Both the position numbers and the translations under genes were made by a program. The notes under the pieces were generated by a model that made no database searches, had not been told where the DNA came from, and saw nothing but the letters and a program-made list of their open reading frames with translations. Shown piece after piece: positions 21,358-41,535 of a stretch of 64,000 nucleotides of DNA (its first letter is position 1; every line of letters begins with the position of its first letter). Origin of the DNA: Octopus sinensis (lineage: Eukaryota); the NCBI RefSeq assembly GCF_006345805.1, contig NC_043010.1, forward strand, positions 186,001 through 250,000, written 5' to 3'.

Positions 21358-21700
21358 TCTATATATATAAAACTGAGAATGTGTGTCTGTCTGTCTGTGT
21401 GTTTCCCTAAAACTTGAGAACTACACAACCAATTTCATTCAAATTTTACACATTCCTTACTTAGGGCCCGGGGAGTGTCATTGGCAAAACTAATTTTTAA
21501 CAATATCATATCTTCTCCACTACAATTCCCTAAAACTTGAGAACTACACAACCAATTTCATTCAAATTTTACACATGCCTTACTTAGGGTCCATGTAGTT
21601 TCATGGGGAAAAAAATGTTCAACTTCTTGCCTAGAGCGAGCCCATAGCAATATCATATCTTCTCCACTATTTCAGTATTATGTGTTAAAAGTGAAACAAA
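21358..21700 (+). mobile_element. Helitron-like non-autonomous 5' fragment with internal 64-bp duplication
   Basis: A|TCTATATATATAAAA..TGTCTGTCTG start. The segment 21403-21466 is repeated at 21526-21589. No 3' CTAG end was found. Confidence 0.5.
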
Positions 21701-21849
21701 AACATTTCTCTATTTTATGTCAGATGCTTTCACTTTAACAGTAAAAATAATAATAACAATTGAATTATATGTAGTAAGTAGTAATTAAAATCAAACTAAA
21801 GTATAATATAATCGTAACATAACAAAAGTAAAAATAGCAATTGGTATAA

Positions 21850-22020
21850 AATTGCATCAATGATTTGAACTTGAATAAGTGGTTTCACATGAATGGGAAT
21901 AAATTAAAAATAAAATTAGTGTGCAGAAATGGAATAGTCCAGATGGATAAGAAAAAATTAAATTAAAGAAAAGGCTATTGTCTATAAAGTATACAATGTA
22001 GAGAAAAAAGAAGATTTGAA
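21850..22020 (+). pseudogene. Host Tx1-type ORF1 (lineage D), left part
   Basis: NKWFHMNGNKLKIKLVC ... IKEKAIVYKVYNVEKKEDLN is homologous to B IEKKRIIYKTYDTTKK and joins in frame with 41085 onward. Confidence 0.6.
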
Positions 22021-23600
22021 CAGCTGGCTCCAAGCTATACGTGTTGTTATCTGTGACTAGACAGTGAAATTTTGTTGTGTAAATTGATTATTATCGCGCG
22101 AGGCGTTTGCCTCCACGTGTGGAAACCTTCCGAAGAAGGTGAATTGACCCTCTAGTCATGGCGACTTACGCGGGGGTCACGGGAAAGAAAAATAATGATT
22201 CGTCGATAATCTGGGAGACATAATGGGGAAATCGACCTACGTGAGTAGAGGCAAGAAATTTGGTACGGTGGAGGTGAGATGTGCAACGGAAGAAATTGCA
22301 GCCTCACTGGCTACCACTGCACTAAGAGCCGAAAAATTTATAATGTGGCCCTCATACAGGGGAAGAAGAGGGGTCCGGGTTAGAATCCCGAATATACCCC
22401 CAGAAGTGAAAACAGAATGGCTGGCAACAGCTATTCTAGGAGCAGCAGAAGAGGAAGTGGAGGTGGAATCCTTTAAGGAGTCCAACGCGATAAACTGGAG
22501 AGGATATGGGGTAGAACTGTGTTTGATGGCCACAAAAGAGGACATTGAAAGGTTCCCCTACAGAATAGAAATTGAAGATGAAAAAACCCTCAGTGTAATT
22601 GTAGAGGGAAAAACCCAACTGTTACTTGTGCGGGACAAGGGGGCACATTAAAAAAGAGTGCCCGTTATACGAATTCGTAGCGGAGTGCGAGCAGGAACTT
22701 GAAGAAAAGAAGAATACGGTAAATGAAAAGAAAACATAGAAAAGGAAACAAAACAACAAGAGAAAGGAAATAATAACTCAATGAAGGAAAAAGAAATAAA
22801 AGAAAAGAAAGAAATAGAACCAAAACAGAGTCAGGAAAAAAAAAGGAAAAAGAAACACAGAAAAAAACAAGAGAGAGATCAGAATCAAACGAAAAGAAAA
22901 GACGGCACACAAAAAGAAAAAGAAAAGGAACATAAAACACGAGAGAAAGAGAGAACAGACAAAGAACCAAAAAGAAAGAGAAGGAAGAAGAAAGAAAAGA
23001 AGGCAAAAAGAGAGAAAGAGAAACAAAGAGAGGAGAACAAGGAAGAAATAAGCCCGAAAAGAAAAACGAGGGAAAACGTAGGACGGAAACAAGATTACTG
23101 CTTCTACAAGTTAGTAACCTTCCATTTCTGCCCTGAAATGAAGAATTGACATGTAATACGGAGGGACATATATGGGTCAACAGGATGACCGATCAGTGGC
23201 AGGAGACTGCTCTAATCCCCGAAGAAAGAGTCGCTGAGTTCCTCAGAGCTGCCGGAGAGAGTGTAACGTTTTAACACGAGTGTTCGAGTGAGAGAGCGGC
23301 TGCCTGAGGGCTCAGTGATTGACTTTAGAGAATTGAAAGCTATTATGGAATACGTATAGAATTGTGAGAAGAGAGAGAAGAAAGAAGAGAAAAAAGAAAA
23401 TATTGTGAAATATATGTGACGAAAATGTAACCTCTCGATTCCGGGGATCGAGTGGGCATTTACATCTCATTGTAAATATTCTTTCATATGTCATTTTTTA
23501 CTTTTATTTTTTCCTTTTCTTGTCATTCGCTTTCTTATTTTAAGTTCCCCGATTGTATTGTCCCCTCTATGTTCGCCCCTTGTGGGTAATAATAAAATCA
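22021..23600 (+). mobile_element. Array unit A1, ORF1-only element with ~196-nt internal deletion
   Basis: Starts CAGCTGGCTCCAAGCTAT, ATG at 22158, deletion near 22211, ends GCCCCTTGTGGGTAATAATAAAATCA. Confidence 0.9.
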
Positions 23601-25372
23601 CAGCTGGCTCCAAGCTATACGTGTTGTTATCTGTGACTAGACAGTGAAATTTTGTTCTGTGTAAAGTGATTAATATCGCGCGAGGCGTTTGCCTCCACGT
23701 GTGGAAACTTTCCGAAGAAGGTGAATTGACCATCTAGTCATTGCGACTTACGCGGGGGTCACGGGAAAAAAAAATAATGATTCGTCGATAATCGTGAAGG
23801 ATGTTTTCTTTGAGAAGAGTAAACTCAAAGAATATGAAAAGCTCTTCAAAAGGGAGGGTGATAGCGTGAAGCTAATCCCCCCCGCGAAAGCAAAAGAGGA
23901 CAAAGAAAACAAACAGTGACATATAGAACCCAAGACAAAAATACGAAGAAACTGGCAAGAGTGGAGATAGCCGAAATCGAAAAATGTCTGGGAGACATAA
24001 TGGGGAAATCAACCTACGTGAGTAGAGGCAGAAATTTGGTACGGTGGAGGTGAGATGTGCAACGGAAGAAATTGCAGCCTCACTGGCTACCACTGTACTA
24101 AGAGCCGAAAAATTTATAATGTGGCCCTCATACAGGGGAAGAAGAGGGGTCCGGGTTAGAATCCCGAATATACCCCCAGAAGTGAAAACAGAATGGCTGG
24201 CAACAGCTATTCTAGGAGCAGCAGAAGAGGAAGTGGAGGTGGAATCCTTTAAGGAGTCCAACGCGATAAACTGGAGAGGATATGGGGTAGAACTGTGTTT
24301 GATGGCCACAAAAGAGGACATTGAAAGGTTCCCCTACAGAATAGAAATTGAAGATGAAAAAACCCTCAGTGTAATTGTAGAGGGAAGAAAACCCAACTGT
24401 TACTTGTGCGGGACAAGGGGGCACATTAAAAAAGAGTGCCCGTTATACGAATTCGTAGCGGAGTGCGAGCAGGAACTTGAAGAAAAGAAGAATACGGTGA
24501 ATGAAAAAGAAAACATAGAAAAGGAAACAAAACAACAAGAGAAAGGAAATAATAAGTCAATGAAGGAAAAAGAAATAAAAGAAATAGAACCAAAACAGAG
24601 TCAGGAAAAAAAAAGGAAAAAGAAACAACAGGAAAAAAACAAGAGAGAGATCAGAATCAAACGAAAAGAAAAGACGGCACACAAAAAGAAAAAGAAAAGG
24701 AACATAAAACACGAGAGAAAGAGAGAACAGACAAAGAACCAAAAAGACAAGAGAAGGAAGAAGAAAGAAAAGAAGGCAAAAAGAGAGAAAGAGAGAAACA
24801 AAGAGAGGAGAACAAGGAAGAAATAAGCCCGAAAAGAAAAACGAGGGAAAACGTAGGACGGAAACAAGATTACTGCTTCTACAAGTTAGTAACCTTCCAT
24901 TTCTGCCCTGAAATGAAAGAATTGACATGTAACACGGAGGGACATATATGGGTCAACAGGATGACCGATCAGGGGCAGGAGACTGCTCTAATCCCCGAAG
25001 AAAGAGGCGCTGAGTTCCTCAGAGCTGCCGGAGAGAGTGTAATATTTTACACGAGTGTTCGAGTGAGAGAGCGGCTGCCTGAGGGCTCAGTGATTGACTT
25101 TAGAGAATTGAAAGCTATTATGGAATACGTATAGAATTGTGAGAAGAGAGAGAAGAAAGAAGAAAAAAGAAAATATTGTGAAATATATGTGACGAAAATG
25201 TAACCTCTCGATTCCGGGGATCGAGTGGGCATTTACATCTCATTGTAATATTCTTTCATATGTCATTTTTTACTTTTATTTTTTCCTTTTCTTGTCATTC
25301 GCTTTCTTATTTTAAGTTCCCCGATTGTATTGTCCCCTCTATGTTCGCCCCTTGTGGGTAATAATAAAATCA
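23601..25372 (+). mobile_element. Array unit A2, ORF1-only element (1772 bp)
   Basis: Near-identical tandem copy. ORF piece 24044-24826 has RRM-like segments, the CYLCGTRGHIKKEC knuckle and a K/E-rich linker. The start ATG is altered. Confidence 0.9.
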
Positions 25373-27139
25373 CAGCTGGCTCCAAGCTATACGTGTTGTT
25401 ATCTGTGACTAGACAGTGAAATTTTGTTCTGTGTAAAGTGATTAATATCGCGCGAGGCGTTTGCCTCCACGTGTGGAAACTTCCGAAGAAGGTGAATTGA
25501 CCCTCTAGTCATGGCGACTTACGCGGGGGTCACGGGAAAAAAAATAATGATTCGTCGATAATCGTGAAGGATGTTTTCTTTGAGAAGAGTAAACTCAAAG
25601 AATATGAAAAGCTCTTCAAAAGGGAGGGTGATAGCGTGAAGCTAATCCCCCCCGCGAAAGCAAAAGAGGACAAAGAAAACAAACAGTGACATATAGAACC
25701 CAAGACAAAAATACGAAGAAACTGGCAAGAGTGGAGATAGCCGAAATCGAAAAATGTCTGGGAGACATAATGGGGAAATCAACCTACGTGAGTAGAGGCA
25801 AGAAATTTGGTACGGTGGAGGTGAGATGTGCAACGGAAGAAATTGCAGCCTCACTGGCTACCACTGTACTAAGAGCCGAAAAATTTATAATGTGGCCCTC
25901 ATACAGGGGAAGAAGAGGGGTCCGGGTTAGAATCCCGAATATACCCCCAGAAGTGAAAACAGAATGGCTGGCAACAGCTATTCTAGGAGCAGCAGAAGAG
26001 GAAGTGGAGGTGGAATCCTTTAAGGAGTCCAACGCGATAAACTGGAGAGGATATGGGGTAGAACTGTGTTTGATGGCCACAAAAGAGGACATTGAAAGGT
26101 TCCCCTACAGAATAGAAATTGAAGATGAAAAAACCCTCAGTGTAATTGTAGAGGGAAAAACCCAACTGTTACTTGTGCGGGACAAGGGGGCACATTAAAA
26201 AAGAGTGCCCGTTATACGAATTCGTAGCGGAGTGCGAGCAGGAACTTGAAGAAAAGAAGAATACGGTAAATGAAAAAGAAAACATAGAAAAGGAACAAAA
26301 CAACAAGAGAAAGGAAATAATAAGTCAATGAAGGAAAAAGAAATAAAAGAAATAGAACCAAAACAGAGTCAGGAAAAAAAAAGGAAAAAGAAACAACAGG
26401 AAAAAAACAAGAGAGAGATCAGAATCAAACGAAAAGAAAAGACGGCACACAAAAAGAAAAAGAAAAGGAACATAAAACACGAGAGAAAGAGAGAACAGAC
26501 AAAGAACCAAAAAGACAAGAGAAGGAAGAAGAAAGAAAAGAAGGCAAAAAGAGAGAAAGAGAGAAACAAAGAGAGGAGAACAAGGAAGAAATAAGCCCGA
26601 AAAGAAAAACGAGGGAAAACGTAGGACGGAAACAAGATTACTGCTTCTACAAGTTAGTACCTTCCATTTCTGCCCTGAAATGAAAGATTGACATGTAATA
26701 CGGAGGGACATATATGGGTCAACAGGATGACCGATCAGGGGCAGGAGACTGCTCTAATCCCCGAAGAAAGAGTCGCTGAGTTCCTCAGAGCTGCCGGAGA
26801 GAGTGTAATATTTTACACGAGTGTTCGAGTGAGAGAGCGGCTGCCTGAGGGCTCAGTGATTGACTTTAGAGAATTGAAAGCTATTATGGAATACGTATAG
26901 AATTGTGAGAAGAGAGAGAAGAAAGAAGAGAAAAAAGAAAATATTGTGAAATATATGTGACGAAAATGTAACCTCTCGATTCCGGGGATCGAGTGGGCAT
27001 TTACATCTCATTGTAAATATTCTTTCATATGTCATTTTTTACTTTTATTTTTTCCTTTTCTTGTCATTCGCTTTCTTATTTTAAGTTCCCCGATTGTATT
27101 GTCCCCTCTATGTTCGCCCCTTGTGGGTAATAATAAAAT
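25373..27139 (+). mobile_element. Array unit A3, ORF1-only element (1767 bp)
   Basis: Tandem copy with ATG at 25511 and 1-nt frameshifts in homopolymer runs. Confidence 0.9.
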
Positions 27140-28916
27140 CAGCTGGCTCCAAGCTATACGTGTTGTTATCTGTGACTAGACAGTGAAACTTTGTTCTGTG
27201 TAAATTGATTATTATCGCGCGAGGCGTTTGCCTCCACGTGTGGAAACGTTCCGAAGAAGGTGAATTGACCCTCTAGTCATGACGACTTACGCGGGGGTCA
27301 CGGGGAAAAAAATAATGATTCGTCGATAATCGTGAAGGATGTTTTCTTTGAGAAGAGTAAACTCAAAGAATATGAAAAGCTCTTCAAAAGGGAGGGTGAT
27401 AGCGTGAAGCTAATCCCCCCCGCGAAAGCAAAAGAGGACAAAGAAAACAAGACAGTGACATATAGAACCCAAGACAAAAATACAAGAAACTGGCAAGAGT
27501 GGAGATAGCCGAAATCGAAAAATGTCTGGGAGACATAATGGGGAAATCAACCTACGTGAGTAGAGGCAAGAAATTTGGTACGGTGGAGGTGAGATGTGCA
27601 ACGGAAGAAATTGCAGCCTCACTGGCTACCACTGTACTAAGAGCCGAAAAATTTATAATGTGGCCCTCATACAAGGGAAGAAGAGGGGTCCGGGTTAAAA
27701 TCCCGAATATACCCCCAGAAGTGAAAACAGAATGGCTGGCAACAGCTATTCTAGGAGCAGCAGAAGAGGAAGTGGAGGTGGAATCTTTTAAGGAGTCCAA
27801 CGCGGTAAACTGGAGAGGATATGGGGTAGAACTGTGTTTGATGGCCACAAAAGAGGACATTGAAAGGTTCCCCTACAGAATAGAATTGAAGATGAAAAAC
27901 CCTCAGTGTAATTGTAGAGGGAAGAAAACCCAACTGTTACTTGTGCGGGACAAGGGGGCACATTAAAAAAGAGTGCCCGTTATACGAATTCGTAGCGGAG
28001 TGCGAGCAGGAACTTGAAGAAAAGAAGAATACGGTAAATGAAAAAGAAAACATAGAAAAGGAAACAAAACAACAAGAGAAAGGAAATAATAAGTCAATGA
28101 AGGAAAAAGAAATAAAAGAAAAGAAAGAAATAGAACCAAAACAGAGTCAGGAAAAAAAAAGGAAAAAGAAACAACAGGAAAAAAACAAGAGAGAGATCAG
28201 AATCAAACGAAAAGAAAAGACGGCACACAAAAAGAAAAAGAAAAGGAACATAAAACACGAGAGAAAGAGAGAACAGACAAAGAACCAAAACACAAGAGAA
28301 AGAAGGAGAAGAAAAGAAGGCAAAAAGAGAGAAAGAGAGAAACAAAGAGAGGAGAACAAGGAAGAAATAAGCCCGAAAAGAAAAATGAAGGAAAACGTAG
28401 GACGGAAACAAGATTACTGCTTCTACAAGTTAGTAACCTTCCATTTCTGCCCTGAAATGAAAGAATTGACATGTAATACGGAGGGACATATATGGGTCAA
28501 CAGGATGACCGATCAGTGGCAGGAGACTGCTCTAATCCCCGAAGAAAGAGTCGCTGAGTTCCTCAGAGCTGCCGGAGAGAGTGTAACGTTTTACACGAGT
28601 GTTCGAGTGAGAGAGCGGCTGCCTGAGGGCTCAGTGATGGACTTTAGAGAATTGAAAGCTATCATGGAATATGTATAGAATTGTGAGAAGAGAGAGAAGA
28701 AAGAGAGAAAAAAGAAAATATTGTGAAATATATGTGACGAAAATGTAACCTCTCGATTCCGGGGATCGAGTGGGCATTTACATCTCATTGTAAATATTCT
28801 TTCATATGTCATTTTTTACTTTTATTTTTTCCTTTTCTTGTCATTCGCTTTCTTATTTTAAGTTCCCCGATTGTATTGTCCCCTCTATGTTCGCCCCTTG
28901 TGGGTAATAATAAAAT
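27140..28916 (+). mobile_element. Array unit A4, ORF1-only element (1777 bp)
   Basis: Tandem copy with ATG at 27279. ORF piece 27941-28678 runs to the IMEYV stop. Confidence 0.9.
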
Positions 28917-29142
28917 CAGCTGGCTCCAAGCTATTTTTGCGTTTATTAGTAAGTTGATATATTTTTGCTCTCGTACTATTATCTCTGTTATTATATACTG
29001 GTCTACCTGTTTTGTCTATTGTTGTCTAACTGACGAAGTCAGCCTTCGCGCGAAGTCTTCGCGTTGGTGTTCCCCCCTCAGTGGGGGAAAACTACAATTT
29101 ATTTTGGATTTACCAAAGGCTTGTTAAAGCCATTTGTTCAAG

Positions 29143-30517
29143 ATGGAGTCCCCCATCTCTTATTCGCCCGTGACGAGCGAGGATGAATACCCGGCGTTGT
29201 CGCCAAGTAAAAAAGAGGCGTTGTCGCCAAGAAAAAAAGAGGCGTTGTCGCCGAAGAAAAAAGAGGCGGCGTCGCCCAAGAAAATGGAAAAACCAGTACC
29301 AGCATCAACTCCAGCAAAAAAATTCGCTGAAGTGGCTGGGAAAAAGATCAAAAAAATAAATATAGAAAATTAAAAAAAATTTGCAGACTGCGTAAAAAAA
29401 GAAGGCACAGAAGTTACTGTGGCCACAAACATACAAATACATGACGATATAGAGAAAAAAAGAATAATATATAAAACTTACGACACAACGAAAAAAATGA
29501 TCCAAAAAATCGAAGAAAAAAAAATAGAGTCTTGTCTAAAACCTTTTATGGATAAAATAACGTATATAAACAGAGGAAAAAGATACGGCACAGTGGAGGT
29601 GCGTTTTACTACGGAGGAGATAGCGAAGAAACTATCGATGGAGCCGATCAAAGCGGAAAACATTGTCTTACTACCATTGTATAAAGGAAAAAGGACATCG
29701 AAAATTTCAATGAACAACATACCGCCAGAGGCAGATGCTGAATGTCTGGTGGCAGCAGTGATGGTAGGTTTGGAGGAAAAAATAAACATCCTCCAGGCCA
29801 CAGTGGAGGAAGAGGAGTTTTGGAAAGGGCAGAAAATAGTGATAGCCATTCAGGCGGAGGTGCAAACACTGGAAGAAATTCCAGAAACGGTAAAGATTAG
29901 TGAAGACGAGAAAATAACAGTTTTCGTGGAGGGCAGGAAGCCGAGGTGCTTCGGCTGCGGCATGAAGGGTCATGTAAGGGCGGAATGCCAACCCCAACCC
30001 AAACCGCAGGAAGCACCTAAGCCAAAAGAAAAAGAAGATAATGTGTCACCAGAAGCAGCGTCGGACGGCCCAGAAGGGAAGACTGAAGGTGTGGAGGTGA
30101 CGGTGACAGCAGAACCAGCGGCGGAGGAAAAAAAGAGCGAGGAAAATAAATGAGGAGGGGTGGGCAAAAATTACCGGAAAAAAAAAGAAAAACGGAAACC
30201 ACCCCTCCCAGAGTAATTTTAAAAAAGTAAAAAGAGTCAATGAACTCGTATATGGCCGTAAGGCAGCAAATAGCAGACTCGGAAACGTGTTGGCAGCCAT
30301 GGCCAAAGTGGAGAAAGTAGTGAAAAAAAACGACTTTGTAATTTACAGAATAGGCCGGAAGGATTACGGGCGGATAAATTCAGAATTCTTCCATGACGTA
30401 GGCCCACTTAGATTGGATGTGACATCTCCACATATATTCGAGGGCCTACGTCAGACTCCCCCACGAGGCCCAGAAAAAGAGTTAGAAGAACAAGAGAAAA
30501 CCGAACCACTGATATAA
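29143..30517 (+). pseudogene. B1 ORF1 (SPKK repeats, RRM-like segments, CCHC knuckle), frameshifted
   Basis: Pieces 29134-29373, 29419-30153 and 30287-30517. Knuckle CFGCGMKGHVRAEC. Confidence 0.85.
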
Positions 30518-30525
30518 GGTAAGTA

Positions 30526-33500
30526 ATGGATTACATTTATGTTGGTTGTTTGAATGTGCGCGGCCTGGGAGCAGGCTGGAAGCAAGGTCGCTTCCTGCAT
30601 GATATCAGGTCGCGTAATTTAGATGTTATTGTTGCTACAGAAACCCGGTTAGAGGGGCAAGAGGTCTACTCCCGCTGTTTGACGGCTACGAGAGTTTTTT
30701 CTCTCCTGGCAGTCCTACAGGCGGAGTGGGTGTTGGTCCTATTAAAAAGAAACCGGGTTTCTGAGAAAAAGTTAATTTTTGCAGATCCAGAAGGTAGGCT
30801 GGTCGTCATGGATTTGACGTTCAGTAATGGTAAAGTTATCAGACTGGTTGCAATTTACGCACCCAACCATACAGGGCAAAGTGATTATTTTCGTGAACTA
30901 GAAAACTTTCTTGGTACTTCGCATTCATTAGTGGTGCTAGGAGACTTTAACACAATTTAGATGTAGATTATGTTGGCTCGTGTCCAGATAGAAAAGGCAA
31001 CAGTGGCTTCATGGAACTGCTAAGCCGCTTTGAGCTAGCAGATCCTTATAGGCTGGAATTTCCGAACGCTCCATTGTGGACATGGTCAAACAGCGACGGA
31101 TCTTCCAGGTCATATTTAGATAGAATACTAATTAGAAAAGTAGACAGTAAAATAGCTAAGTGTCCACAGTTTTACCCGATCAGCTACAGTGATCATAAAA
31201 TGGTCACTTGTAAGCTTGACATAGATAAGGTTAAAAATAGAGGATCCGGTTACTGGAAACTTAATACGTCCCTTTTGGCGATTAAGGAGTACAAAGACCG
31301 GATTAGGAATATAATTCAGAGGGCACTATCTGGTACCATCATTAATAACAAATGGTGGTACGCCCTCAAACGAGCCATCAAGTTTGAGTCTATTAGATAT
31401 AGCATAGGAGTAGTGGCTAGAGAGGCTAGAAGGGAAACTACTCTAGTTAAGGAATTAGAGGAAGCCATGAAAACTGGCTCTGCGGCTCAGGTGGCGTCCA
31501 AGAGACTGGTGTTAAACCAGCACCTCGAGGCCAAACACATGGGCTGCATTGTCAGGGCTAGAATCCGCCATATGGGATGTGAAGGAATCAACGCCGTGAG
31601 ATGGGCCCGAGTGGTGGAAGCTCAGCATGGTAACGATGCCACGATTCGATCTTTGACGAACCAACAAGGTGAGTTGATAAACGAACCCGAGGAGATGTGT
31701 GAGGCCTTTCAGGAGCACTTCGCTCAGCTTTTCGGTGAGTGCGGCGGACTGGATAGGAGGAGGGCCTTTACGGACCTACTCGACGGGCTGCCGCGCTTAT
31801 CGGGGCGAGATGCGGAGGGCTGTGAAGGGCCAATCACGCCTGAGGAGGTGGTTGAGGCAATGGCGGACTGCGGCGCGGGCAAGGCGCCGGGTTTGGATGG
31901 TCTACCCTATGAGTTATATAAGAGTATGCCAGACTTGTTCGGGCACCTACTGGCGGAGGTCTATGCGAACTGGCAGCAGAACGGGCTTATACCCAGATCT
32001 GTGCGCCGGGGAGTAGTGACTCTCGTCAGAAAGGACCCGAGCAAGGGGGAGTGCATTGATAATTTCAGGCCCATCACTCTGCTAAACACAGAGTTGAAGA
32101 TTTTGGCCAAAGTGTTATCGAAAAGATTGGCGCGTGTCGCGCATGGTCTGATCGGAGAGGCACAGACATGTGCCGTTCCGGGCAGATCCATTCAGGATAA
32201 TCTCCATCTAATGCGGTACACTATAGAGGGGTTTAATAGTGATTCTGGCAAGGGTGGGGCACTGGTCCATTTAGACCAATCTAAAGCTTTTGATAGGGTC
32301 GACCATCGTTACCTGGTATCTGCCCTGGCACAGTTCGGGCTGAGCCTTGGCTTCCTCAGGTGGATTATCCAAATTTATGATAACATCGACTCGGTAGTTC
32401 GGGTGAACGGCTTCTTGTCGAAGCCGTTCAAAATCAAACGCTCGGTTCGTCAAGGGTGTCCGCTCTCCCCGCTTTTGTACGTGATGGCTCTCGAGCCATT
32501 ACTGCGAAAACTGAGCGGCATCCCGAGACAGCCAGGTAATGGAAAATCAGTGTCAGCGTACGCGGATGACATCACCATCATCGTAACCGAAATGGACCAC
32601 CTATGTAAAGTAGGCAAGGCCATAGAGGTTTACGAGACGGTGACAGGAGCAAAAGTTAATCGCGAAAAGTCAGTCGGCTTGCAACTCGGCACCTGGAGAG
32701 GCAAGTCGATGCCTCCTGACGGCGTCGTGGGACGTTGGACGGAGGGTCCGATTAAACTGCTAGGGGTCTGGTTCGGTCCAGACCTCCAAATAGAGAAGAA
32801 TTGGGGCGAGGTAACGAGCAAGGTGGCTGCAGTAGCTATCCCTGAAAGGGAGGGCGGAGGTGGCCAATGTGTTTATCGCATCGGTTATCACCTACCGCCT
32901 TTCCGTCGTTCCTTGCCCTGATTCGTGGTTGATCAAGTTGGAAAGACAGCTCTTCTACTTCTTGTGGAAGGGCGGGAAACCACTTGTGAAACGCTCTACT
33001 TGCTGTCAACAACCGTTAAAGGGTGGGCTAGGGATGCCTTGGCTGATGATGCGCAGACATGCGCTGAGGTTAAGACATCTGTGGCTCTACCTGGATGGTG
33101 AACGGGTGTGGTCTTCGCTAGCAAAACTGATGTTTCCCAAGTTCACTAGTTTCGGTGGATGGGAAACCTGGCTGAATCGTAGATCGAAACTTGGTACTTG
33201 GTACACGGAGTGTCGCAAGGCTCTCCTGCTATTCCGTCGCTCGGGCAACGCCTGCGGTGGGGGTTCCACCACATTCTTCTATAGAGGGTTGGTAGAGGCG
33301 GAATGTGAAGATACCTTGGGGGAAACCCTAGGTCTCGACGATAATCAGCTGGCCAGTCTGTTCCGACGTACGTTCGAGCCGAGGACACTGGACAACTTCC
33401 AGAAGTCTCTGGCATGGCAATGCTACAGAGGAGCTCTACCTGTTCGGGATAAACTCGCAAGGCACGGTGGCCAAGACAGTCCGATATGTCCAAGATGCGG

Positions 33501-33888
33501 GCGGGATAGGGAAACCGTCCTGCACGCTATTGTTCATTGTCCGGACGTGTCTGAGGTGTGGGTTTATGCCGAACACCTGTTGTCAGGTACACGAAGAGTA
33601 CAGCTGTCGACTGAGTCGATTACAAAAATTGACCCACCGGATTTCCTCGTGAATGAAGGTAAGTTTCGTTTTCTCGTTGTAGTAGCAATTGCGAAAGAGG
33701 TGATATGGCAAACGAGAATGAAAGGTGTACAGTCAGGCAAGTTCATCTCCGGCCCTGGTTTGATGAAGTATTTCATCTTTCACCTGAAAAGGAAGATAGG
33801 GCTAGAGAGAATATGCCTGACTAGGAGAGTGTATGAAGAACGATGGAAGGATGTAGCACGAAAGTTGCGAATGAAAGATACAACATAA
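30526..33888 (+). pseudogene. B1 ORF2: APE endonuclease, reverse transcriptase, CCHC; interrupted
   Basis: CLNVRGL, ATETRL, LGDFN, YLDRIL, SDH; KAPGLDG, LDQSKAFDRVDH, RQGCPLSP, YADD; CPRCGRDRETVLHAIVHC. Small deletions near 30958 and 32837. Confidence 0.92.
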
Positions 33889-34132
33889 ATGTAATACCAA
33901 GCGCAACCAAAAGTATCAGTGGGGAGGCGGGGCTCGTGGGGTCCGAGCTAAACCCGCACCCACTCCACCCGTAATGTCTTCCGGTCTGTCCCATCATTCG
34001 ATTTCTGTCCATTTATTGTAATTCATGAAAATTTTAAATTCGATTTATTGTAAAAATCCATTCGTGTGTCTGACCCCATCATCAGATTGTATTGTCCCGT
34101 CTATGTTCGCCCCTTGTGGGTAATAATAAAAC

Positions 34133-35904
34133 AAGCTGGCTCCAAGCTATACGTGTTGTTATCTGTGACTAGACAGTGAAACTTTGTTCTGTGTAAATTG
34201 ATTATTATCGCGCGAGGCGTTTGCCTCCACGTGTGGAAACGTTCCGAAGAAGGTGAATTGACCCTCTAGTCATGGCGACTTACGCGGGGGTCACGGGAAA
34301 AAAAAATAATGATTCGTCGATAATCGTGAAGGATGTTTTCTTTGAGAAGAGTAAACTCAAAGAATATGAAAAGCTCTTCAAAAGGGAGGGTGATAGCGTG
34401 AAGCTAATCCCCCCCGCGAAAGCAAAAGAGGACAAAGAAAACAAGACAGTGACATATAGAACCCAAGACAAAAATACAAAGAAACTGGCAAGAGTGGAGA
34501 TAGCCGAAATCGAAAAATGTCTGGGAGACATAATGGGGAAATCACCTACGTGAGTAGAGGCAAGAAATTTGGTACGGTGGAGGTGAGATGTGCAACGGAA
34601 GAAATTGCAGCCTCACTGGCTACCACTGTACTAAGAGCCGAAAAATTTATAATGTGGCCCTCATACAAGGAAGAAGAGGGGTCCGGGTTAAAATCCCGAA
34701 TATACCCCCAGAAGTGAAAACAGAATGGCTGGCAACAGCTATTCTAGGAGCAGCAGAAGAGGAAGTGGAGGGGAATCCTTTAAGGAGTCCAACGCGGTAA
34801 ACTGGAGAGGATATGGGGAGAACTGTGTTTGATGGCCACAAAAGAGGACATTGAAAGGTTCCCCTACAGAATAGAAATTGAAGATGAAAAAACCCTCAGT
34901 GTAATTGTAGAGGGAAGAAAACCAAACTGTTACTTGTGCGGGACAAGGGGGCACATTAAAAAGAGTGCCCGTTATACGAATTCGTAGCGGAGTGCGAGCA
35001 GGAACTTGAAGAAAAGAAGAATACGGTAAATGAAAAAGAAAACATAGAAAAGGAAACAAAACAACAAGAGAAAGGAAATAATAAGTCAATGAAGGAAAAA
35101 GAAATAAAAGAAAAGAAAGAATAGAACCAAAACAGAGTCAGGAAAAAAAAGGAAAAAGAAACAACAGGAAAAAAACAAGAGAGAGATCAGAATCAAACGA
35201 AAAGAAAAGACGGCACAAAAAGAAAAAGAAAAGGAACATAAAACACGAGAGAAAGAGAGAACAGACAAAGAACCAAAAAGACAGAGAAAGAAGGAGAAAG
35301 AAAAGAAGGCAAAAAGAGAGAAAGAGAGAAACAAAGAGAGGAGAACAAGGAAGAAATAAGCCCGAAAAGAAAAACGAGGGAAAACGTAGGACGGAAACAA
35401 GATTACTGCTTCTACAAGTTAGTAACCTTCCATTTCTGACCTGAAATGAAAGAATTGACATGTAATACGGAGGGACATATATGGGTCAACAGGATGACCG
35501 ATCAGTGGCAGGAGACTGCTCTAATCCCCGAAGAAAGAGTCGCTGAGTTCCTCAGAGCTGCCGGAGAGAGTGTAACGTTTTACACGAGTGTTCGAGTGAG
35601 AGAGCGGCTGCCTGAGGGCTCAGTGATTGACTTTAGAGAATTGAAAGCTATTATGGAATACGTATAGAATTGTGAGAAGAGAGAAGAAGAAAGAGAAAAA
35701 AGAAAATATTGTGAAATATATGTGACGAAAATGTAACCTCTCGATTCCGGGGATCGAGTGGGCATTTACATCTCATTGTAAATATTCTTTCATATGTCAT
35801 TTTTTACTTTTATTTTTTCCTTTTCTTGTCATTCGCTTTCTTATTTTAAGTTCCCCGATTGTATTGTCCCCTCTATGTTCGCCCCTTGTGGGTAATAATA
35901 AAAT
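34133..35904 (+). mobile_element. Array unit A5, ORF1-only element (1772 bp)
   Basis: ATG at 34272 (MATYAGVTGKK). Shares diagnostic variants with A4. Confidence 0.9.
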
Positions 35905-38900
35905 CAGCTGGCTCCAAGCTATTTTTGCGTTTATTAGTAAGTTGATATATTTTTGCTCTCGTACTATTATCTCTGTTATTATATACTGTTGGTCTACCTG
36001 TTTTGTCTATTGTTGTCTAACTGACGAAGTCAGCCTTCGCGCGAAGTCTTCGCGTTGGTGTTCCCCCCTCAGTGGGGGAAAACTACAATTATTTTGGATT
36101 TACCAAGGCTTGTTAAAGCCATTTGTTCAAGATGGAGTCCCCCATCTCTTATTCGCCCGTGACGAGCGAGGATGAATACCCGGCGTTGTCGCCAAGTAAA
36201 AAGAGGCGTTGTCGCCAAGAAAAAAAGGCGTTGTCGCCGAAGAAAAAAGAGGCGGCGTCGCCAAAAAATGGAAAAACCAGTACCAGCATCAACTCCAGCA
36301 AAAAAATTCGCTGAAGTGGCTGGGAAAAGATCAAAAAATAAATATAAAATTAAAAAAATTTGCAGACTGCGTAAAAAAAAGAAGGCACAGAAGTGACTGT
36401 GGCCACAAACATACAAATACATGACGATATAGAGAAAAAAAGAATAATATATAAAACTTACGACACAACGAAAAAAATGATCCAAAAAATCGAAGAAAAA
36501 AAATAGAGTCTTGTCTAAAACCTTTTATGGATAAAATAACGTATATAAACAGAGGAAAAATACGGCACAGTGGAGGTGCGTTTTACTACGGAGGAGATAG
36601 CGAAGAAACTATCGATGGAGCCAATCAAAGCGGAAAACATTGTCTTACTACCATTGTATAAAGGAAAAAGGACGTCGAAAATTTCAATGAACAACATACC
36701 GCCAGAGGCAGATGCTGAATGTCTGGTGGCAGCAGTGATGGTAGGTCTGGAGGAAAAAATAAACATCCTCCAGGCCACAGTGGAGGAAGAGGAGTTTTGG
36801 AAAGGGCAGAAAATAGTGATAGCCATTCAGGCGGAGGTGCAAACACTGGAAGAAATTCCAGAAACGGTAAAGATTAGTGAAGACGAGAAAATAACAGTTT
36901 TCGTGGAGGGCAGGAAGCCGAGGTGCTTCGGCTGCGGCAAGAAGGGTCATGTAAGGGCGGAATGCCAACCCCAACCCAAACCGCAGGAAGCACCTAAGCC
37001 AAAAGAAAAAGAAGATAATGTGTCACCAGAAGCAGCGTCGGACGGCCCAGAAGGGAAGACTGAAGGTGTGGAGGTGACGGTGACAGCAGAACCAGCGGCG
37101 GAGGAAAAAAAGAGCGAGGAAAAGATAAATGAGGAGGGGTGGGCAAAAATTACCGGAAAAAAAAAAGAAAAACGGAAACCACCCCTCCCAGAGTAATTTT
37201 AAAAACGTGTTGGCAGCCATGGCCAAAGTGGAGAAAGTAGTGAAAAAAAACGACTTTGTAATTTACAGAATAGGTCGGAAGGATTACGGGCGGATAAAGT
37301 CAGAATTCTTCCATGACGTAGGCCCACTTAGATTGGATGTGACATCTCCACATATATTCGAGGGCCTACGTCAGACTCCCCCACGAGGCCCAGAAAAAGA
37401 GTTAGAAGAACAAGAGAAAACCGAACCACTGATATAAGGTAAGTAATGGATTACATTTATGTTGGTTGTTTGAATGTGCGCGGCCTGGGAGCAGGCTGGA
37501 AGCAAGGTCGCTTCCTGCATGATATCAGGTCGCGTAATTTAGATGTTATTGTTGCTACAGAAACCCGGTTAGAGGGGCCAAGAGGTCTACTCCCGCTGTT
37601 TGACGGCTACGAGAGTTTTTTCTCTCCTGGCAGTCCTACAGGCGGGAGTGGGGTGTTGGTCCTATTAAAAAGAAACCGGGTTTCTGAGAAAAAGTTAATT
37701 TTTGCAGATCCAGAAGGTAGGCTGGTCGTCATGGATTTGACGTTCAGTAATGGTAAAGTTATCAGACTGGTTGCAATTTACGCACCCAACCATACAGGGC
37801 AAAGTGATTATTTTCGTGAACTAGAAAACTTTCTTGGTACTTCGCATTCATTAGTGGTGCTAGGAGACTTTAACACAATTTACGAAGCGGATGTAGATTA
37901 TGTTGGCTCGTGTCCAGATAGAAAAGGCAACAGTGGCTTCATGGAACTGCTAAGCCGCTTTGAGCTAGCAGATCCTTATAGGCTGGAATTTCCGAACGCT
38001 CCATTGTGGACATGGTCAAACAGCGACGGATCTTCCAGGTCATATTTAGATAGAATACTAATTAGAAAAGTAGACAGTAAAATAGCTAAGTGTCCACAGG
38101 TTTACCCGATCAGCTACAGTGATCATAAAATGGTCACTTGTAAGCTTGACATAGATAAGGTTAAAAATAGAGGATCCGGTTACTGGAAACTTAATACGTC
38201 CCTTTTGGCGATTAAGGAGTACAAAGACCGGATTAGGAATATAATTCAGAGGGCACTATCTGGTACCATCATTAATAACAAATGGTGATACGCCCTCAAA
38301 CGAGCCATCAAGTTTGAGTCTATTAGATATAGCATAGGAGTAGTGGCTAGAGAGGCTAGAAGGGAAACTACTCTAGTTAAGGAATTAGAGGAAGCCATGA
38401 AAACTGGCTCTGCGGCTCAGGTGGCGTCCAAGAGACTGGTGTTAAACCAGCACCTCGAGGCCAAACACATGGGCTGCATTGTCAGGGCTAGAATCCGCCA
38501 TATGGGATGTGAAGGAATCAACGCCGTGAGATGGGCCCGAGTGGTGGAAGCTCAGCATGGTAACGATGCCACGATTCGATCTTTGACGAACCAACAAGGT
38601 GAGTTGATAAACGAACCCGAGGAGATGTGTGAGGCCTTTCAGGAGCACTTCGCTCAGCTTTTCGGTGAGTGCGGCGGACTGGATAGGAGGAGGGCCTTTA
38701 CGGACCTACTCGACGGGCTGCCGCGCTTATCGGGGCGAGATGCGGAGGGCTGTGAAGGGCCAATCACGCCTGAGGAGGTGGTTGAGGCAATGGCGGACTG
38801 CGGCGCGGGCAAGGCGCCGGGTTTGGATGGTCTACCCTATGAGTTATATAAGAGTATGCCAGACTTGTTCGGGCACCTACTGGCGGAGGTCTATGCGAAC

Positions 38901-41084
38901 TGGCAGCAGAACGGGCTTATACCCAGATCTGTGCGCCGGGGAGTAGTGACTCTCGTCAGAAAGGACCCGAGCAAGGGGGAGTGCATTGATAATTTCAGGC
39001 CCATCACTCTACTAAACACAGAGTTGAAGATTTTGGCCAAAGTGTTATCGAAAAGATTGGCGCGTGTCGCGGATGGTCTGATCGGAGAGGCACAGACATG
39101 TGCCGTTCCGGGCAGATCCATTCAGGATAATCTCCATCTAATGCGGTACACTATAGAGGGGTTTAATAGTGATTCTGGCAAGGGTGGGGCACTGGTCCAT
39201 TAGACCAATCTAAAGCTTTTGATAGGGTCGACCATCGTTACCTGGTATCTGCCCTGGCACAGTTCGGGCTGAGCCTTGGCTTCCTCAGGTGGATTATCCA
39301 AATTTATGATAACATCGACTCGGTAGTTCGGGTGAACGGCTTCTTGTCGAAGCCGTTCAAAATCAAACGCTCGGTTCGTCAAGGGTGTCCGCTCTCCCCG
39401 CTTTTGTACGTGATGGCTCTCGAGCCATTACTGCGAAAACTGAGCAGCATCCCGAGACAGCCAGGTAATGGAAAATCAGTGTCAGCGTACGCGGATGACA
39501 TCACCATCATCGTAACCGAAATGGACCACCTATGTAAAGTAGGCAAGGCCATAGAGGTTTACGAGACGGTGACAGGAGCAAAAGTTAATCGCGAAAAGTC
39601 AGTCGGCTTGCAACTAGGCACCTGGAGAGGCAAGTCGATGCCTCCTGACAGCGTCGTGGGACGTTGGACGGAGGGTCCGATTAATCTGCTAGGGGTCTGG
39701 TTCGGTCCAGACCTCCAAATAGAGAAGAATTGGGGCGAGGTAACGAGCAAGGTGGCTGCAGTAGCCAAGACCTGGTCTTGGCGGTGGCTATCCCTGAAAG
39801 GGAGGGCGGAGGTGGCCAATGTGTTTATCGCATCGGTTATCACCTACCGCCTTTCCGTCGTTCCTTGCCCTGATTCGTGGTTGATCAAGTTGGAAAGACA
39901 GCTCTTCTACTTCTTGTGGAAGGGCGGGAAACCACTTGTGAAACGCTCTACTTGCTGTCAACAACCGTTAAAGGGTGGGCTAGGGATGCCTTGGCTGATG
40001 ATGCGCAGACATGCGCTGAGGTTAAGACATCTGTGGCTCTACCTGGATGGTGAACGGGTGTGGTCTTCGCTAGCAAAACTGATGTTTCCCAAGTTCACTA
40101 GTTTCGGTGGATGGGAAACCTGGCTGAATCGTAGATCGAAACTTGGTACTTGGTACACGGAGTGTCGCAAGGCTCTCCTGCTATTCCGTCGCTCGGGCAA
40201 CGCCTGCGGTGGGGGTTCCACCACATTCTTCTATAGAGGGTTGGTAGAGGCGGAATGTGAAGATACCTTGGGGGAAACCCTAGGTCTCGACGATAATCAG
40301 CTGGCCAGTTTGTTCCGACGTACGTTCGAGCCGAGGACACTGGACAACTTCCAGAAGTCTCTGGCATGGCAATGCTACAGAGGAGCTCTACCTGTTCGGG
40401 ATAAACTCGCAAGGCACGGTGGCCAAGACAGTCCGATATGTCCAAGATGCGGGCGGGATAGGGAAACCGTCCTGCACGCTATTGTTCATTGTCCGGACGT
40501 GTCTGAGGTGTGGGTTATGCCGAACACCTGTTGTCAGGTACACGAAGAGTACAGCTGTCGACTGAGTCGATTACAAAAATTGACCCACCGGATTTCCTCG
40601 TGAATGAAGGTAAGTTTCGTTTTCTCGTTGTAGTAGCAATTGCGAAAGAGGTGATATGGAAGACGAGAATGAAAGGTTTACAGTCAGGCAAGTTCATCTC
40701 CGGCCCTGGTTTGATGATTATTTCATCTTTCACCTGAAAAGGAAGATAGGGCTGGAGAGAATATGCCTGACTAGGAGAGTGTATGAAGAACGATGGAAGG
40801 ATGTAGCACGAAAGTTGCGAGTGAAAGATACAACATAAATGTAATACCAAGCGCAACCAAAAGTATCAGTGGGGAGGCGGGGCTCGTAGGGTCCGAGCTA
40901 AACCCGCACCCACTCCACCCGTAATGTCTTCCGGTCTGTCCCATCATTCGATTTCTGTCCATTTATTGTAATTCATGAAAATTTTTAAATCCGATTTATT
41001 GTAAAAACCCACTCGTTTGTCTGACCCCATCATCAGATTGTATTGTCCCATCTATGTTCGCCTCTTGTGGGTAATAATAAAACA
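35905..41084 (+). mobile_element. Array unit B2, full-length Tx1/L1-clade non-LTR retrotransposon
   Basis: Near-identical to B1. ORF1 ends at 37437 and ORF2 spans 37446-40838. Confidence 0.92.
37446..40838 (+). pseudogene. B2 ORF2: APE, RT, CCHC; interrupted
   Basis: Intact endonuclease (37446-38288), premature TGA at 38286-38288, and 1-nt frameshifts near 39200, 40517 and 40717. Confidence 0.9.
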
Positions 41085-41395
41085 ACCTGGAGGAAAGCAC
41101 CTTCGAAAAGTGTCTTGGTGCGTCTATGAAAGATATCTAACCAGGGGCGGTAAATTCGCCACAATAGAAGTAATGTTCGAGTCAACGGAGCGTGCAAGGG
41201 AGTACTCGACTCGAACTTGCAAAGTGGAAATATTTTATTTTTACCTTTATATCTAGGATGTAGGATGTCTCGGATAAAAATTTAAAATGCCCCCCCACTC
41301 AGAAGTAGAGGTAGGCTGGATTGTAGCCACACTTCTATACAAGAGGGACAACAAGATACAATTGATCGAAATTACAAGAGACGGGCTTACAATTC
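41085..41395 (+). pseudogene. Host Tx1-type ORF1 (lineage D), right part
   Basis: LEESTFEKCLGASMKDI / LTRGGKFATIEVMFESTERAREYST / LPLYLGCRMSRIKFKMPPHSEVEVGWIVATLL is collinear with A and B ORF1. Confidence 0.75.
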
Positions 41396-41535
41396 CAGTC
41401 AGTTATATATTTTGAGTATTGTTATCACTAGCGATATCAAGATATAATTTTGTGTTTTGTATTTTATGTGTAGATGTATATATATATAGATGTACATGTA
41501 ATATGTACACATATATATACACATATATACATGCA

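What the first reader, a model, noticed from the sequence alone, without database searches (positions are those of the whole stretch)
22021..41084. Non-telomeric HeT-A/TAHRE-like system: ORF1-only partners and an autonomous Tx1 LINE in one head-to-tail array
Seen: seven units, A-A-A-A-B-A-B, all on the same strand, all 5'-complete apart from one internal deletion, and joined end to start with no spacer. A (1.77 kb) encodes only an ORF1 (RRM-like segments, CCHC knuckle, K/E-rich linker, C-terminal domain) that is strongly diverged from B ORF1, yet the two elements share both termini. Established: ordinary LINE copies are dispersed and mostly 5'-truncated, and mixed arrays of Gag-only and RT-encoding elements are the hallmark of Drosophila telomeric HeT-A/TART/TAHRE. 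Inference: a two-component retrotransposon system in which A borrows B's ORF2 and both build interstitial arrays. I do not recognise a description of this in cephalopods, but cannot search the literature.
Basis: partly seen in the sequence, partly recalled or inferred. Interest (0 to 1): 0.85.

Follow-up and report, generated by a model that had tools for sequence, protein, structure and literature searches.

The report
Octopus LINE and Gag-only partners stacking
A jumping gene of octopus and several smaller relatives that keep only its RNA-binding gene all insert at one exact spot inside an old dead relative, piling up head to tail into ordered stacks; this is a new variant of known behaviour rather than a new kind of element.

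Summary
Window 22022-41084 holds seven same-strand, full-length units in the order A-A-A-A-B-A-B. A is 1.77 kb and encodes ORF1 only. B is 5.2 kb and encodes ORF1 plus an endonuclease/RT/zinc-finger ORF2.

The interpretation needs revision in three ways.
- The array sits at one precise site inside a ~1.2 kb repeated host element that I call T, a decayed ORF1-bearing relative.
- The "shared 5' terminus" is a copy of the target sequence, not an element end. Only the ~47-nt 3' tail is truly shared.
- The same T-left/(ORF1-only)n/B/T-right structure recurs at seven interstitial loci on five Octopus vulgaris chromosomes.

The youngest A subfamily, 0.2-1.5% apart between chromosomes, always lies next to T-left, and B always lies next to T-right. 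The arrays therefore grow by repeated site-specific retrotransposition at the T-left junction.

At least four ORF1-only lineages share B's tail. A's ORF1 is under purifying selection (pN/pS ~0.2). Intact A and B copies exist in O. vulgaris, but every copy in this window is frameshifted.

This combines known habits: Tx1-type target specificity with tandem copies sandwiching target duplications, R1 arrays, and HAL1/HeT-A-type Gag-only partners. The telomere analogy holds only in part, and Tx1 clade membership could not be tested.

The parts
21342..22021 (+). T-left: the left part of the ~1.2 kb repeated host element T, ending ...AAGAAGATTTGAAC at the insertion point. It is preceded by a (TA)n tract.
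   Evidence: The same ~500-680 nt precedes the arrays at L001, L002, L004, L005, L006 and L008. Homology stops at the (TA)n tract.
22022..23599 (+). A1: ORF1-only unit with a 196-nt internal deletion near 22211.
23600..25371 (+). A2: ORF1-only unit. Its largest ORF1 piece is 24044-24826 (RRM-like part, CCHC, K/E-rich linker).
25372..27140 (+). A3: ORF1-only unit, 0.3% different from A2.
27141..28917 (+). A4: ORF1-only unit. ORF1 pieces are 27499-27966 and 27941-28678; the second runs from the CCHC to the C-terminal ...MEYV.
28918..34133 (+). B1: 5.2 kb LINE. ORF1 is 29419-30153. ORF2 is split into 30526-30960 (start of the endonuclease), 31011-32921 (RT) and 32860-33888 (zf-RVT).
34134..35905 (+). 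A5: ORF1-only unit, closest to A4 (0.8%).
35906..41084 (+). B2: 5.2 kb LINE. ORF1 is 36570-37196. ORF2 is split into 37446-38288 (endonuclease), 38343-39203 and 39332-40603 (RT and zf-RVT). It carries a 60-nt deletion relative to B1.
41085..41564 (+). T-right: the right part of host element T. It contains a decayed ORF1 (RRM-like) remnant and ends in the hairpin GACCCGGCAACGACGGGTC. At the other loci this is followed by TTTAATGCTAGTA(TA)n.
   Evidence: It aligns with the sequence after B at L002, L003, L004 and L005. Translation across the T-left/T-right join matches B ORF1.
28918..28934 (+). Target-derived head segment S (AGCTGGCTCCAAGCTAT). The same segment heads all seven units, at 22022, 23602, 25374, 27141, 28918, 34134 and 35906.
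   Evidence: It resembles the start of T-right (41083-41101). At L006 and L008, where the insertion point differs, the head segment copies that site instead.
34085..34131 (+). Shared 3' tail of about 47 nt (GATTGTATTGTCCCNTCTATGTTCGCCCCTTGTGGGTAATAATAAAA). It ends every A and B unit, for example 28869-28915 in A4 and 41036-41082 in B2.

Best explanation
B is an L1/Tx1-like LINE of Octopus with an endonuclease, a reverse transcriptase and a C-terminal zinc finger. It inserts site-specifically, within GATTTGAAC/ATGGAGG (+-2 nt), into a ~1.2 kb repeated host element T. T is itself a decayed ORF1-bearing fragment of a related element.

Each integration leaves a target-derived segment of about 17-20 nt at the head of the new copy, so the junction between T-left and that segment is regenerated and can be hit again. 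A, and at least three further ORF1-only lineages (A', A'', D), carry B's 3' tail but no ORF2. They are inferred to be reverse-transcribed and integrated in trans by B-type ORF2p at the same junction.

Because new copies always enter next to T-left, each array is an ordered stack with B, the first arrival, next to T-right. Older A subfamilies follow and the youngest lie next to T-left.

Shown from sequence: the anatomy, the common site, the target-derived head, the shared tail, the order of subfamilies, selection on A ORF1, and the younger age of B relative to T.

Inferred: trans-mobilisation by B's ORF2p, recognition of T-left by the endonuclease, and the way the 5' junction is made.

The window's A-B-A-B part may in addition include one block duplication by unequal exchange.
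For: Same site at independent loci. Window flank homology to O. vulgaris loci is confined to T, about 680 nt on the left and 480 nt on the right. T-left/(A)n/B/T-right is found at:
- L002 (A-B)
- L004 (D-A-A'-B)
- L005 (A4-B)
- L003 (>=8 A, then B, then T-right)
- L001 (T-left, A8, B)
- L006 and L008 (A''/A' then B)
These lie on chromosomes OX597814, 816, 820, 821 and 830, at 12-100 Mb from the chromosome ends.

B is younger than T. The 3' 1.5 kb of B differs by 0.6-2.7% between loci, whereas the adjoining T-right differs by 4.5-10.4%.

The head segment is target-derived. In L006 and L008, T lacks T-right 1-306. Insertion is 6-7 nt after the same T-left motif, and the heads read AATTCCAGCCTGTTATAT / AATTCCAGTCTGTTATAC against the flank AATTCCAGTCTGTTATAT. 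In L004 the 28%-diverged A and A' carry the same head.

Stacking order. L1A1-3, L3A2-5 and L5A1-2, on three chromosomes, are 0.2-1.5% apart and always T-left-proximal, yet they are 4-5% from the B-proximal units of their own arrays. B-proximal units also match across loci: L1A8 and L2A1 differ by 0.6%. The chance of this order is about 1e-4 by simple combinatorics.

Partner status of A:
- A shares the 47-nt tail.
- No ORF2 is present in any of 26 copies.
- ORF1 pN/pS is 0.18-0.28, p down to 2e-13.
- ORF1 is intact in 8 of 21 O. vulgaris copies.
- An intact B with a 1130-codon ORF2 sits next to an intact A in L002.

Precedents. Tx1-clade LINEs and their SINEU-3 partners target one site in a mariner, with a 16-bp TSD and tandem copies sandwiching a TSD (PMC4494074). 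R1 arrays carry a 33-nt target duplication between units (PMC5932611).
Against: - No empty T copy was seen, because T could not be searched genome-wide. Site preference therefore rests on 9 occupied sites.
- The head segments are not clean duplications. In the window they differ from the T-right start at about 6 of 17 positions. The same variant (…CTCCAAGCTAT) occurs in the window and in L002, and B's variant (…GGAAATCAA) occurs at four loci. This suggests that part of the head travels with the RNA.
- B is the first arrival in all 9 arrays, which serial insertion alone does not explain.
- The order of the two older A subfamilies is inverted between L001 and L005, and some units look mosaic.
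- In the window all heads are identical, and A4-B1 and A5-B2 are equally diverged (~0.8%). Unequal exchange would give the same pattern.
- No experiment or read data were available.
Confidence: 0.75

Rival explanations
1. Local DNA-level amplification. One or two insertions into T were followed by unequal exchange between the repeated head segments or tails, as in the Drosophila R1 array. On this view A need not be mobile any more.
For: In the window all seven head segments are identical. The A4-B1 and A5-B2 blocks are equally diverged, 0.8% and 0.76%, and neighbouring units are the most similar. In L007 the four junctions are identical. R1 provides a precedent.
Against: In O. vulgaris, units of one subfamily are 0.2-1.5% apart across three chromosomes but 4-5% from other units of their own array. 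Head segments differ from junction to junction in L003 and L005 while the unit bodies are nearly identical. Four different ORF1-only lineages occur in the arrays.
Confidence: 0.15
2. One-shot concatemer. ORF2p starts on its own B RNA through cis-preference, then jumps end-to-end onto A RNAs, so a whole A(n)-B array is laid down in a single integration.
For: This would explain why B is always next to T-right, why there is usually a single B, why all units are 5'-complete, and why different partner lineages are mixed in one array.
Against: A target-derived head segment is present at every internal junction, including the site-specific ones of L006 and L008. Units in an array belong to subfamilies of different age in a consistent order. 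Junction dinucleotides are element-specific (TC after A, CA after B), not random filler.
Confidence: 0.08
3. Composite dispersal. A T element that had once received A and B spread as a whole unit (T-left-A-B-T-right), so the common 'site' reflects common descent rather than site specificity.
For: B lies next to T-right everywhere. Some head variants are shared between loci.
Against: T-right copies are about four times more diverged than the B copies beside them. There are two different insertion points, in T-long and T-short. B-adjacent partners are as much as 28% diverged (A versus A') next to B copies that differ by only 2-5%.
Confidence: 0.04
4. Assembly artefact of a repetitive region.
For: Arrays of near-identical 1.8-5 kb units are hard to assemble. 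One related array, L009, runs into an N gap. Many frameshifts lie in A-rich runs.
Against: The same architecture, with clean flanks on both sides, appears at several loci of an independent chromosome-level assembly (GCA_951406725.2) and in O. sinensis. Units within the window differ by private substitutions and indels.
Confidence: 0.03

Closest known systems
Target-specific Tx1-clade LINEs with non-autonomous partners (Tx1 in Tx1D of Xenopus; crocodilian Tx1-Mar and SINEU-3 in Mariner-N4_AMi; Kojima 2015, PMC4494074)
   Same: An endonuclease/RT LINE and a partner sharing its 3' tail insert at one site inside another transposon. They leave a ~16-18 nt target duplication, and tandem copies sandwiching that duplication arise by sequential insertion.
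   Different: Here the partners are 1.7 kb protein-coding ORF1-only elements of at least four lineages, not SINEs. The arrays reach 8 or more units with an ordered age structure. The target is a dead relative's ORF1 remnant. Clade membership of B is untested.
Drosophila telomeric HeT-A / TART / TAHRE
   Same: Head-to-tail, same-orientation arrays mix a Gag-only element with RT-encoding elements. The Gag-only element is the more numerous, and its gag is under negative selection.
   Different: The octopus arrays are interstitial, with unique flanks on both sides. Insertion is at an internal nick with a target duplication rather than onto a chromosome end. There are no oligo(A) junctions. The ORF2 is L1-like, not Jockey-clade. 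Nothing points to a host function.
HAL1 (half-L1) of mammals
   Same: A non-autonomous LINE derivative that encodes only ORF1p and has arisen several times. Here there are also several independent ORF1-only lineages.
   Different: HAL1 copies are dispersed like L1. Here the copies home to one site and stack. A ORF1 is only 35% identical to its partner's ORF1 and has its own C-terminal domain.
R1 tandem array of Drosophila melanogaster (double insertion plus unequal exchange; PMC5932611)
   Same: A site-specific LINE forms tandem units separated by a duplication of the target sequence.
   Different: In R1 the duplications are identical and expansion is by unequal exchange. In the O. vulgaris arrays the head segments vary and the units come from different subfamilies shared between chromosomes.

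Membership tests
HeT-A/TART/TAHRE-type telomeric retrotransposon system | Arrays lie at, and extend, chromosome ends | tested here: not met
   The window has non-repeat flanks on both sides, including a C2H2 zinc-finger ORF at 56-59 kb. The O. vulgaris loci lie 12-100 Mb inside chromosomes of 80-226 Mb.
HeT-A/TART/TAHRE-type telomeric retrotransposon system | Head-to-tail arrays, one orientation, mixing a Gag-only element with Gag+Pol elements | tested here: met
HeT-A/TART/TAHRE-type telomeric retrotransposon system | Addition onto a free end without target duplication, with oligo(A) at junctions | tested here: not met
   Every unit has a target-derived head segment. Junctions read AATAAAATC or AATAAAACA with no A-run.
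Tx1 clade of non-LTR retrotransposons | ORF2 with an apurinic-like endonuclease and RT, L1-group affinity, and an ORF1 upstream | tested here: met
   Pfam finds Exo_endo_phos, RVT_1 and zf-RVT. The best solved-structure sequence match is human L1 ORF2p at 4.5e-48, against about 1e-25 for R2.
Tx1 clade of non-LTR retrotransposons | RT groups with Tx1 reference elements in a phylogeny | not testable with these tools
   No Repbase/Dfam references or named Tx1 proteins could be obtained. A 2026 O. vulgaris repeat annotation lists 13 recently active 'L1-Tx1' families.
Tx1 clade of non-LTR retrotransposons | Target-sequence preference, often for another repeat | tested here: met
   All nine arrays are in T. 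Seven are at GATTTGAAC/ATGGAGG. Two are in a T variant, 6-7 nt after the same T-left motif. Empty T copies were not surveyed.
ORF1-only non-autonomous LINE (HAL1-like) | Encodes ORF1p only and shares the 3' end of an autonomous partner | tested here: met
   26 A copies of 1.76-1.78 kb have no ORF2. The 47-nt tail is shared with B.
ORF1-only non-autonomous LINE (HAL1-like) | Derived from its partner by loss of ORF2 | tested here: inconclusive
   The ORF1s are homologous but only 35% identical, and A has a C-terminal domain absent from B. A true deletion derivative of a B-like element (dB', ORF1 plus half of ORF2) does exist in O. sinensis.
ORF1p with RRM fold plus CCHC knuckle | RRM domain followed by a zinc knuckle | tested here: inconclusive
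   The CCHC is confirmed. An AlphaFold model gives a beta-alpha-beta-beta-alpha-beta domain at residues 40-130 (pLDDT 76-89). Its best fold matches are the TAP RNA-binding domain and RRMs, but only at E >= 3e-3.
TE-derived tandem array by double insertion and unequal exchange (R1 type) | Identical target duplications between all units | tested here: inconclusive
   Met in the window and in L007. Not met in L003 and L005, where the heads differ at every junction.

The most novel reading that the evidence does not exclude
The ORF1-only elements may not be mere parasites of B. Their own, selectively maintained ORF1 protein, with a C-terminal domain that B lacks, could supply RNP formation or homing to T, while rare B copies supply the enzyme. 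That would be a division of labour convergent with HeT-A/TART, but at interstitial 'landing pads' in a mollusc, with each array keeping a readable time-ordered record of insertions.
Probability: 0.2. Interest if true: 0.8.

Novelty: new variant of a known kind. Interest (0 to 1): 0.55.

Why it matters
The system joins three things usually seen apart:
- strict target specificity of an L1/Tx1-like LINE;
- protein-coding Gag-only partners, in several lineages, that are under selection;
- ordered head-to-tail stacking.

It shows that HeT-A-like 'Gag-only plus RT donor' partnerships are not peculiar to fly telomeres. The arrays also work as natural stratigraphic records of subfamily succession, which could be used to date activity and to study competition between a LINE and its parasites.

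A LINE that homes to a short defined site inside a harmless repeat is also of the kind now explored for targeted transgene insertion.

For cephalopod genomics, the finding flags a class of loci that are likely to be mis-assembled and mis-annotated. The A ORF1 copies are currently annotated as 'uncharacterized' host genes.

Tried and rejected
- **RNA-gene target.** I looked for an RNA gene as the target, as Tx1-clade elements often use. Rfam at permissive thresholds and a tRNA scan of the flanks gave only chance microRNA-like hits on TA-rich or palindromic DNA.
- **Orthologous locus.** None of L001-L006 shares more than T with the window.
- **More T copies.** I searched the window and loci for further T copies, empty or filled, and found none.
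- **Naming B's clade.** Database names were no help: the best ORF2 hit is 59% identical, and neither the hits nor their cluster members carry informative names.
- **ORF1 against solved structures.** By sequence, only the zinc knuckle matches. The fold search is weak, and the C-terminal domain of A was modelled with low confidence.
- **Conserved RNA structure in the shared 3' tail.** Only an invariant 4-bp hairpin was found, with no covariation.
- **Hypotheses rejected.** I considered and rejected composite dispersal, a one-shot template-jumping concatemer, and purely local duplication as the main process (see rivals).
- **Technical note.** I recovered their sequence through DNA alignment outputs.

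Full report
**1. What is in the window**

Self-comparison shows seven same-strand units between 22022 and 41084 in the order A-A-A-A-B-A-B. The A units are 1765-1775 nt. A1 is 1576 nt because it lacks 196 nt. The A units differ from each other by 0.3-1.5%. B1 (5214 nt) and B2 (5177 nt) differ by 39 substitutions and several indels.

B has an ORF1 with a CCHC knuckle and an ORF2 with Exo_endo_phos, RVT_1 and zf-RVT domains. Its RT region matches human LINE-1 ORF2p (E 4.5e-48) far better than R2 proteins.

A encodes only an ORF1, about 467 codons when repaired conceptually. It is homologous to B's ORF1: 35% identity over 206 aa, E 7e-41. Its K/E-rich linker and C-terminal domain have no counterpart in B.

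No unit in the window has intact reading frames. Many of the frameshifts lie in A-rich runs and could be assembly errors.

Units are separated by a short segment that turns out not to belong to the elements.

**2. The array sits inside another repeat**

Homologues of A's ORF1 are annotated as uncharacterised proteins of Octopus vulgaris on several chromosomes, which confirms the cephalopod origin. I fetched the DNA around them and found the same structure again and again in assembly GCA_951406725.2:
- L001: T-left, 8 A units, then B
- L002: T-left, A, B, T-right
- L003: at least 8 A units, then B, then T-right
- L004: T-left, D, A, A', B, T-right
- L005: T-left, 4 A units, B, T-right

.

Flank similarity to the window is limited to about 680 nt on the left (window 21342-22021) and about 480 nt on the right (41085-41564). 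It ends in (TA)n tracts on both sides. None of these loci is the orthologue of the window. They are independent copies of a ~1.2 kb repeated element that I call T.

Translating across the joined T-left/T-right gives ...KAIVYKVYNVEKKEDLN|LEESTFEKCLGASMKDI.... This aligns with B ORF1 (...KRIIYKTYDTTKKMIQKIEEKKIESCLKPFMDKI...). T-right keeps weak but significant similarity to B ORF1 (E 2e-6).

T is thus a decayed ORF1-bearing fragment of a related element, interrupted at one exact point. All loci are interstitial.

**3. The 'shared 5' terminus' is target sequence**

Each unit starts with 17-22 nt that imitate the first bases of T-right (ACATGGAGGAAAGCACC...). The window's version is (AC)AGCTGGCTCCAAGCTAT.

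The decisive cases are L006 and L008. There T lacks T-right 1-306. The elements sit 6-7 nt after the same T-left motif (AAGAAGA..AAC|). The head segments now read AATTCCAGCCTGTTATAT (L006 B) and AATTCCAGTCTGTTATAC (L008 B), copying the local downstream flank AATTCCAGTCTGTTATAT.

In L004 the 28%-diverged A and A' units carry the same head, ACATGTCTGAAATCTAT.

The head is therefore a target-site duplication, or a product of target-primed 5' joining, and not an element terminus. The true 5' ends of A (..CGTGTTGTTATCTGTGA) and B (TTTTTGCGTTTATTAG) differ.

What A and B do share is the last ~47 nt. A', A'' and the B-like B' share it too, and D shares the last ~22 nt.

The same insertion distance from T-left in two T variants suggests that recognition lies in T-left. 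This is an inference.

**4. T is older than B, so B came to T repeatedly**

Between loci the 3' 1.5 kb of B differs by 0.6-2.7% (about 5% for L006). The T-right sequence immediately beside it differs by 4.5-10.4%.

If T-A-B had spread as one unit, the two would be equally diverged. Together with the two different insertion points, this argues for site-specific insertion into pre-existing T copies.

**5. How the arrays grow**

I computed a distance matrix of 26 A units: 5 from the window and 21 from O. vulgaris. It shows a clear order.
- The units nearest T-left in L001 (A1-A3), L003 (A2-A5) and L005 (A1-A2) are 0.2-1.5% apart from each other although they lie on three chromosomes.
- Those same units are 4-5% from the B-proximal units of their own arrays.
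- B-proximal units also pair across loci: L1A8 with L2A1 at 0.6%, and L1A4 with L5A4 at 1.6%.

Random placement would give this 'youngest on the left' pattern with a probability of about 1e-4 (1/56 x 1/35 x 1/6).

In L003 and L005 the head segments differ at every junction while the unit bodies are nearly identical.

These facts fit successive retrotranspositions, from a common evolving pool of A masters, into the T-left junction of each array. They do not fit purely local duplication. They also do not fit a single concatemer laid down by template jumping.

The order of two older subfamilies is inverted between L001 and L005, and some units look mosaic. Recombination or conversion therefore also plays a part.

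In the window itself all heads are identical, and A4-B1 and A5-B2 are equally diverged (~0.8%). One block duplication by unequal exchange is a reasonable addition there.

**6. Is A a functional partner?**

None of the 26 A copies has an ORF2.

Between subfamily consensus sequences, pN/pS of A ORF1 is 0.18-0.28 (binomial p down to 2e-13). It is 0.10-0.19 in the part that ends at the CCHC knuckle. The protein has therefore mattered for A's propagation.

Eight of 21 O. vulgaris copies keep an open ORF1. Seven are 379-381 codons and one, L1A5, is 467 codons.

L002 has an intact A directly upstream of a B with open ORF1 (340 codons) and ORF2 (1130 codons). The family may therefore still be active.

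Further ORF1-only lineages use the same site and tail:
- D: an open frame of 499 codons, 29% identical to A ORF1
- A': 72% nucleotide identity to A
- A''.

An AlphaFold model of A ORF1p is confident only for residues 40-130. These form a beta-alpha-beta-beta-alpha-beta domain, and its best fold matches are RNA-binding domains and RRMs at weak E-values. 'RRM-like' is plausible but not established.

**7. Relatives do the same elsewhere**

A B-like family, B', is 87% identical to B.
- In O. sinensis (L007) there is a full-length intact B' followed by at least three 3.57 kb internally deleted copies. Each deleted copy keeps ORF1 and the C-terminal half of ORF2.
- In O. vulgaris (L009) there are three tandem full-length B' copies, apparently at another target.
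- L009 ends in an assembly gap.

Stacking is thus a habit of this LINE lineage.

In the remaining 45 kb of the window there is no other A or B fragment. There is only a piece of an unrelated LINE at 6167-6590.

**8. Comparison with what is known**

The Tx1 clade is known for target preference. Tx1 inserts in the piggyBac-type Tx1D. [quoted passage not shown]

The R1 array of Drosophila has 33-nt target duplications between units (PMC5932611).

HAL1 is an ORF1-only L1 derivative that arose several times (PMC5753468).

HeT-A/TART/TAHRE form head-to-tail arrays mixing a Gag-only element with RT donors, but at chromosome ends and without target duplication (PMC5537684).

A 2026 repeat annotation of O. 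vulgaris lists 13 recently active 'L1-Tx1' families. It does not mention arrays or ORF1-only partners (PMC13282606).

The present system works like a Tx1/R1-type homing LINE whose non-autonomous partners are HAL1/HeT-A-like. Membership of B in the Tx1 clade could not be tested, because no reference sequences were available.

**9. Open points**

- B is next to T-right in all nine arrays, and only the window has a second, internal B. This could reflect an early wave of B into virgin T copies or a mechanistic preference; I cannot tell which.
- The head segments are imperfect and partly lineage-specific copies of the target. The same variant occurs in the window and L002, and B's variant occurs at four loci. 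Part of the head may travel with the RNA and be repaired against the target.
- No empty T copy has been seen, because T could not be searched genome-wide.

**10. Verdict**

The two-component reading is supported by sequence evidence, while the telomere analogy and the 'both termini shared' claim are not.

This is a new variant of known kinds of behaviour. It is of moderate to good interest to transposon biologists and worth a genome-wide census.

Noticed in passing
window 21342-22021 and 41085-41564; L001-L006, L008: The host element T is bounded by (TA)n tracts on both sides at every locus. It ends in the hairpin GACCCGGCAACGACGGGTC followed by TTTAATGCTAGTA(TA)n. It may itself be a retroposon that targets (TA)n microsatellites. 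A short variant lacking about 300 nt exists (L006, L008).
   Followed up: partly
window 41561-41786: An inverted repeat with 67-nt arms (91% complementary) and a 92-nt loop lies directly after T-right. It looks like a MITE and replaces the TTTAATGCTAGTA(TA)n seen at other loci. Rfam gives a sub-threshold MIR831-like hit here.
   Followed up: partly
window 56130-58829 (-): An 899-codon open frame with at least 10 C2H2 zinc fingers, apparently a single-exon zinc-finger gene of the kind expanded in octopus.
   Followed up: partly
window 62320-63629 (+): ORFs with a Gag-type CCHC knuckle and a retroviral-type aspartyl protease. This looks like the start of an LTR retrotransposon running towards the end of the window.
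   Followed up: partly
window 50466-50948 (-): A DDE_3 transposase fragment, a remnant of a Tc1/mariner-like DNA transposon.
   Followed up: partly
window 6167-6590 (-): A fragment of a different LINE RT, 40-50% amino-acid identity to B ORF2.
   Followed up: partly
window 54983-55127: A 48-nt tandem repeat in 3 copies, GAT/GAG-rich.
   Followed up: no
L007 9758-20482 (O. sinensis CM016867.1): 3.57 kb internally deleted derivatives of a B-like LINE, stacked in tandem behind an intact full-length copy. Each keeps ORF1 (450 aa, annotated LOC115215450) and a 563-codon C-terminal half of ORF2.
   Followed up: partly
L009 19185 onward (O. vulgaris OX597840.1): A tandem array of three B-like units ends in a run of N, an assembly gap. 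These arrays are evidently hard to assemble.
   Followed up: no
L001, L003, L005 and other O. vulgaris A units: In many A copies a 59-62-codon N-terminal ORF (MATYAGVTGK...) is out of frame with the main 380-codon ORF1 in the same way. Only L1A5 reads through (467 codons). This could be a fixed frameshift, a real internal start at MGKSTY/MDKSTY, or programmed frameshifting.
   Followed up: no
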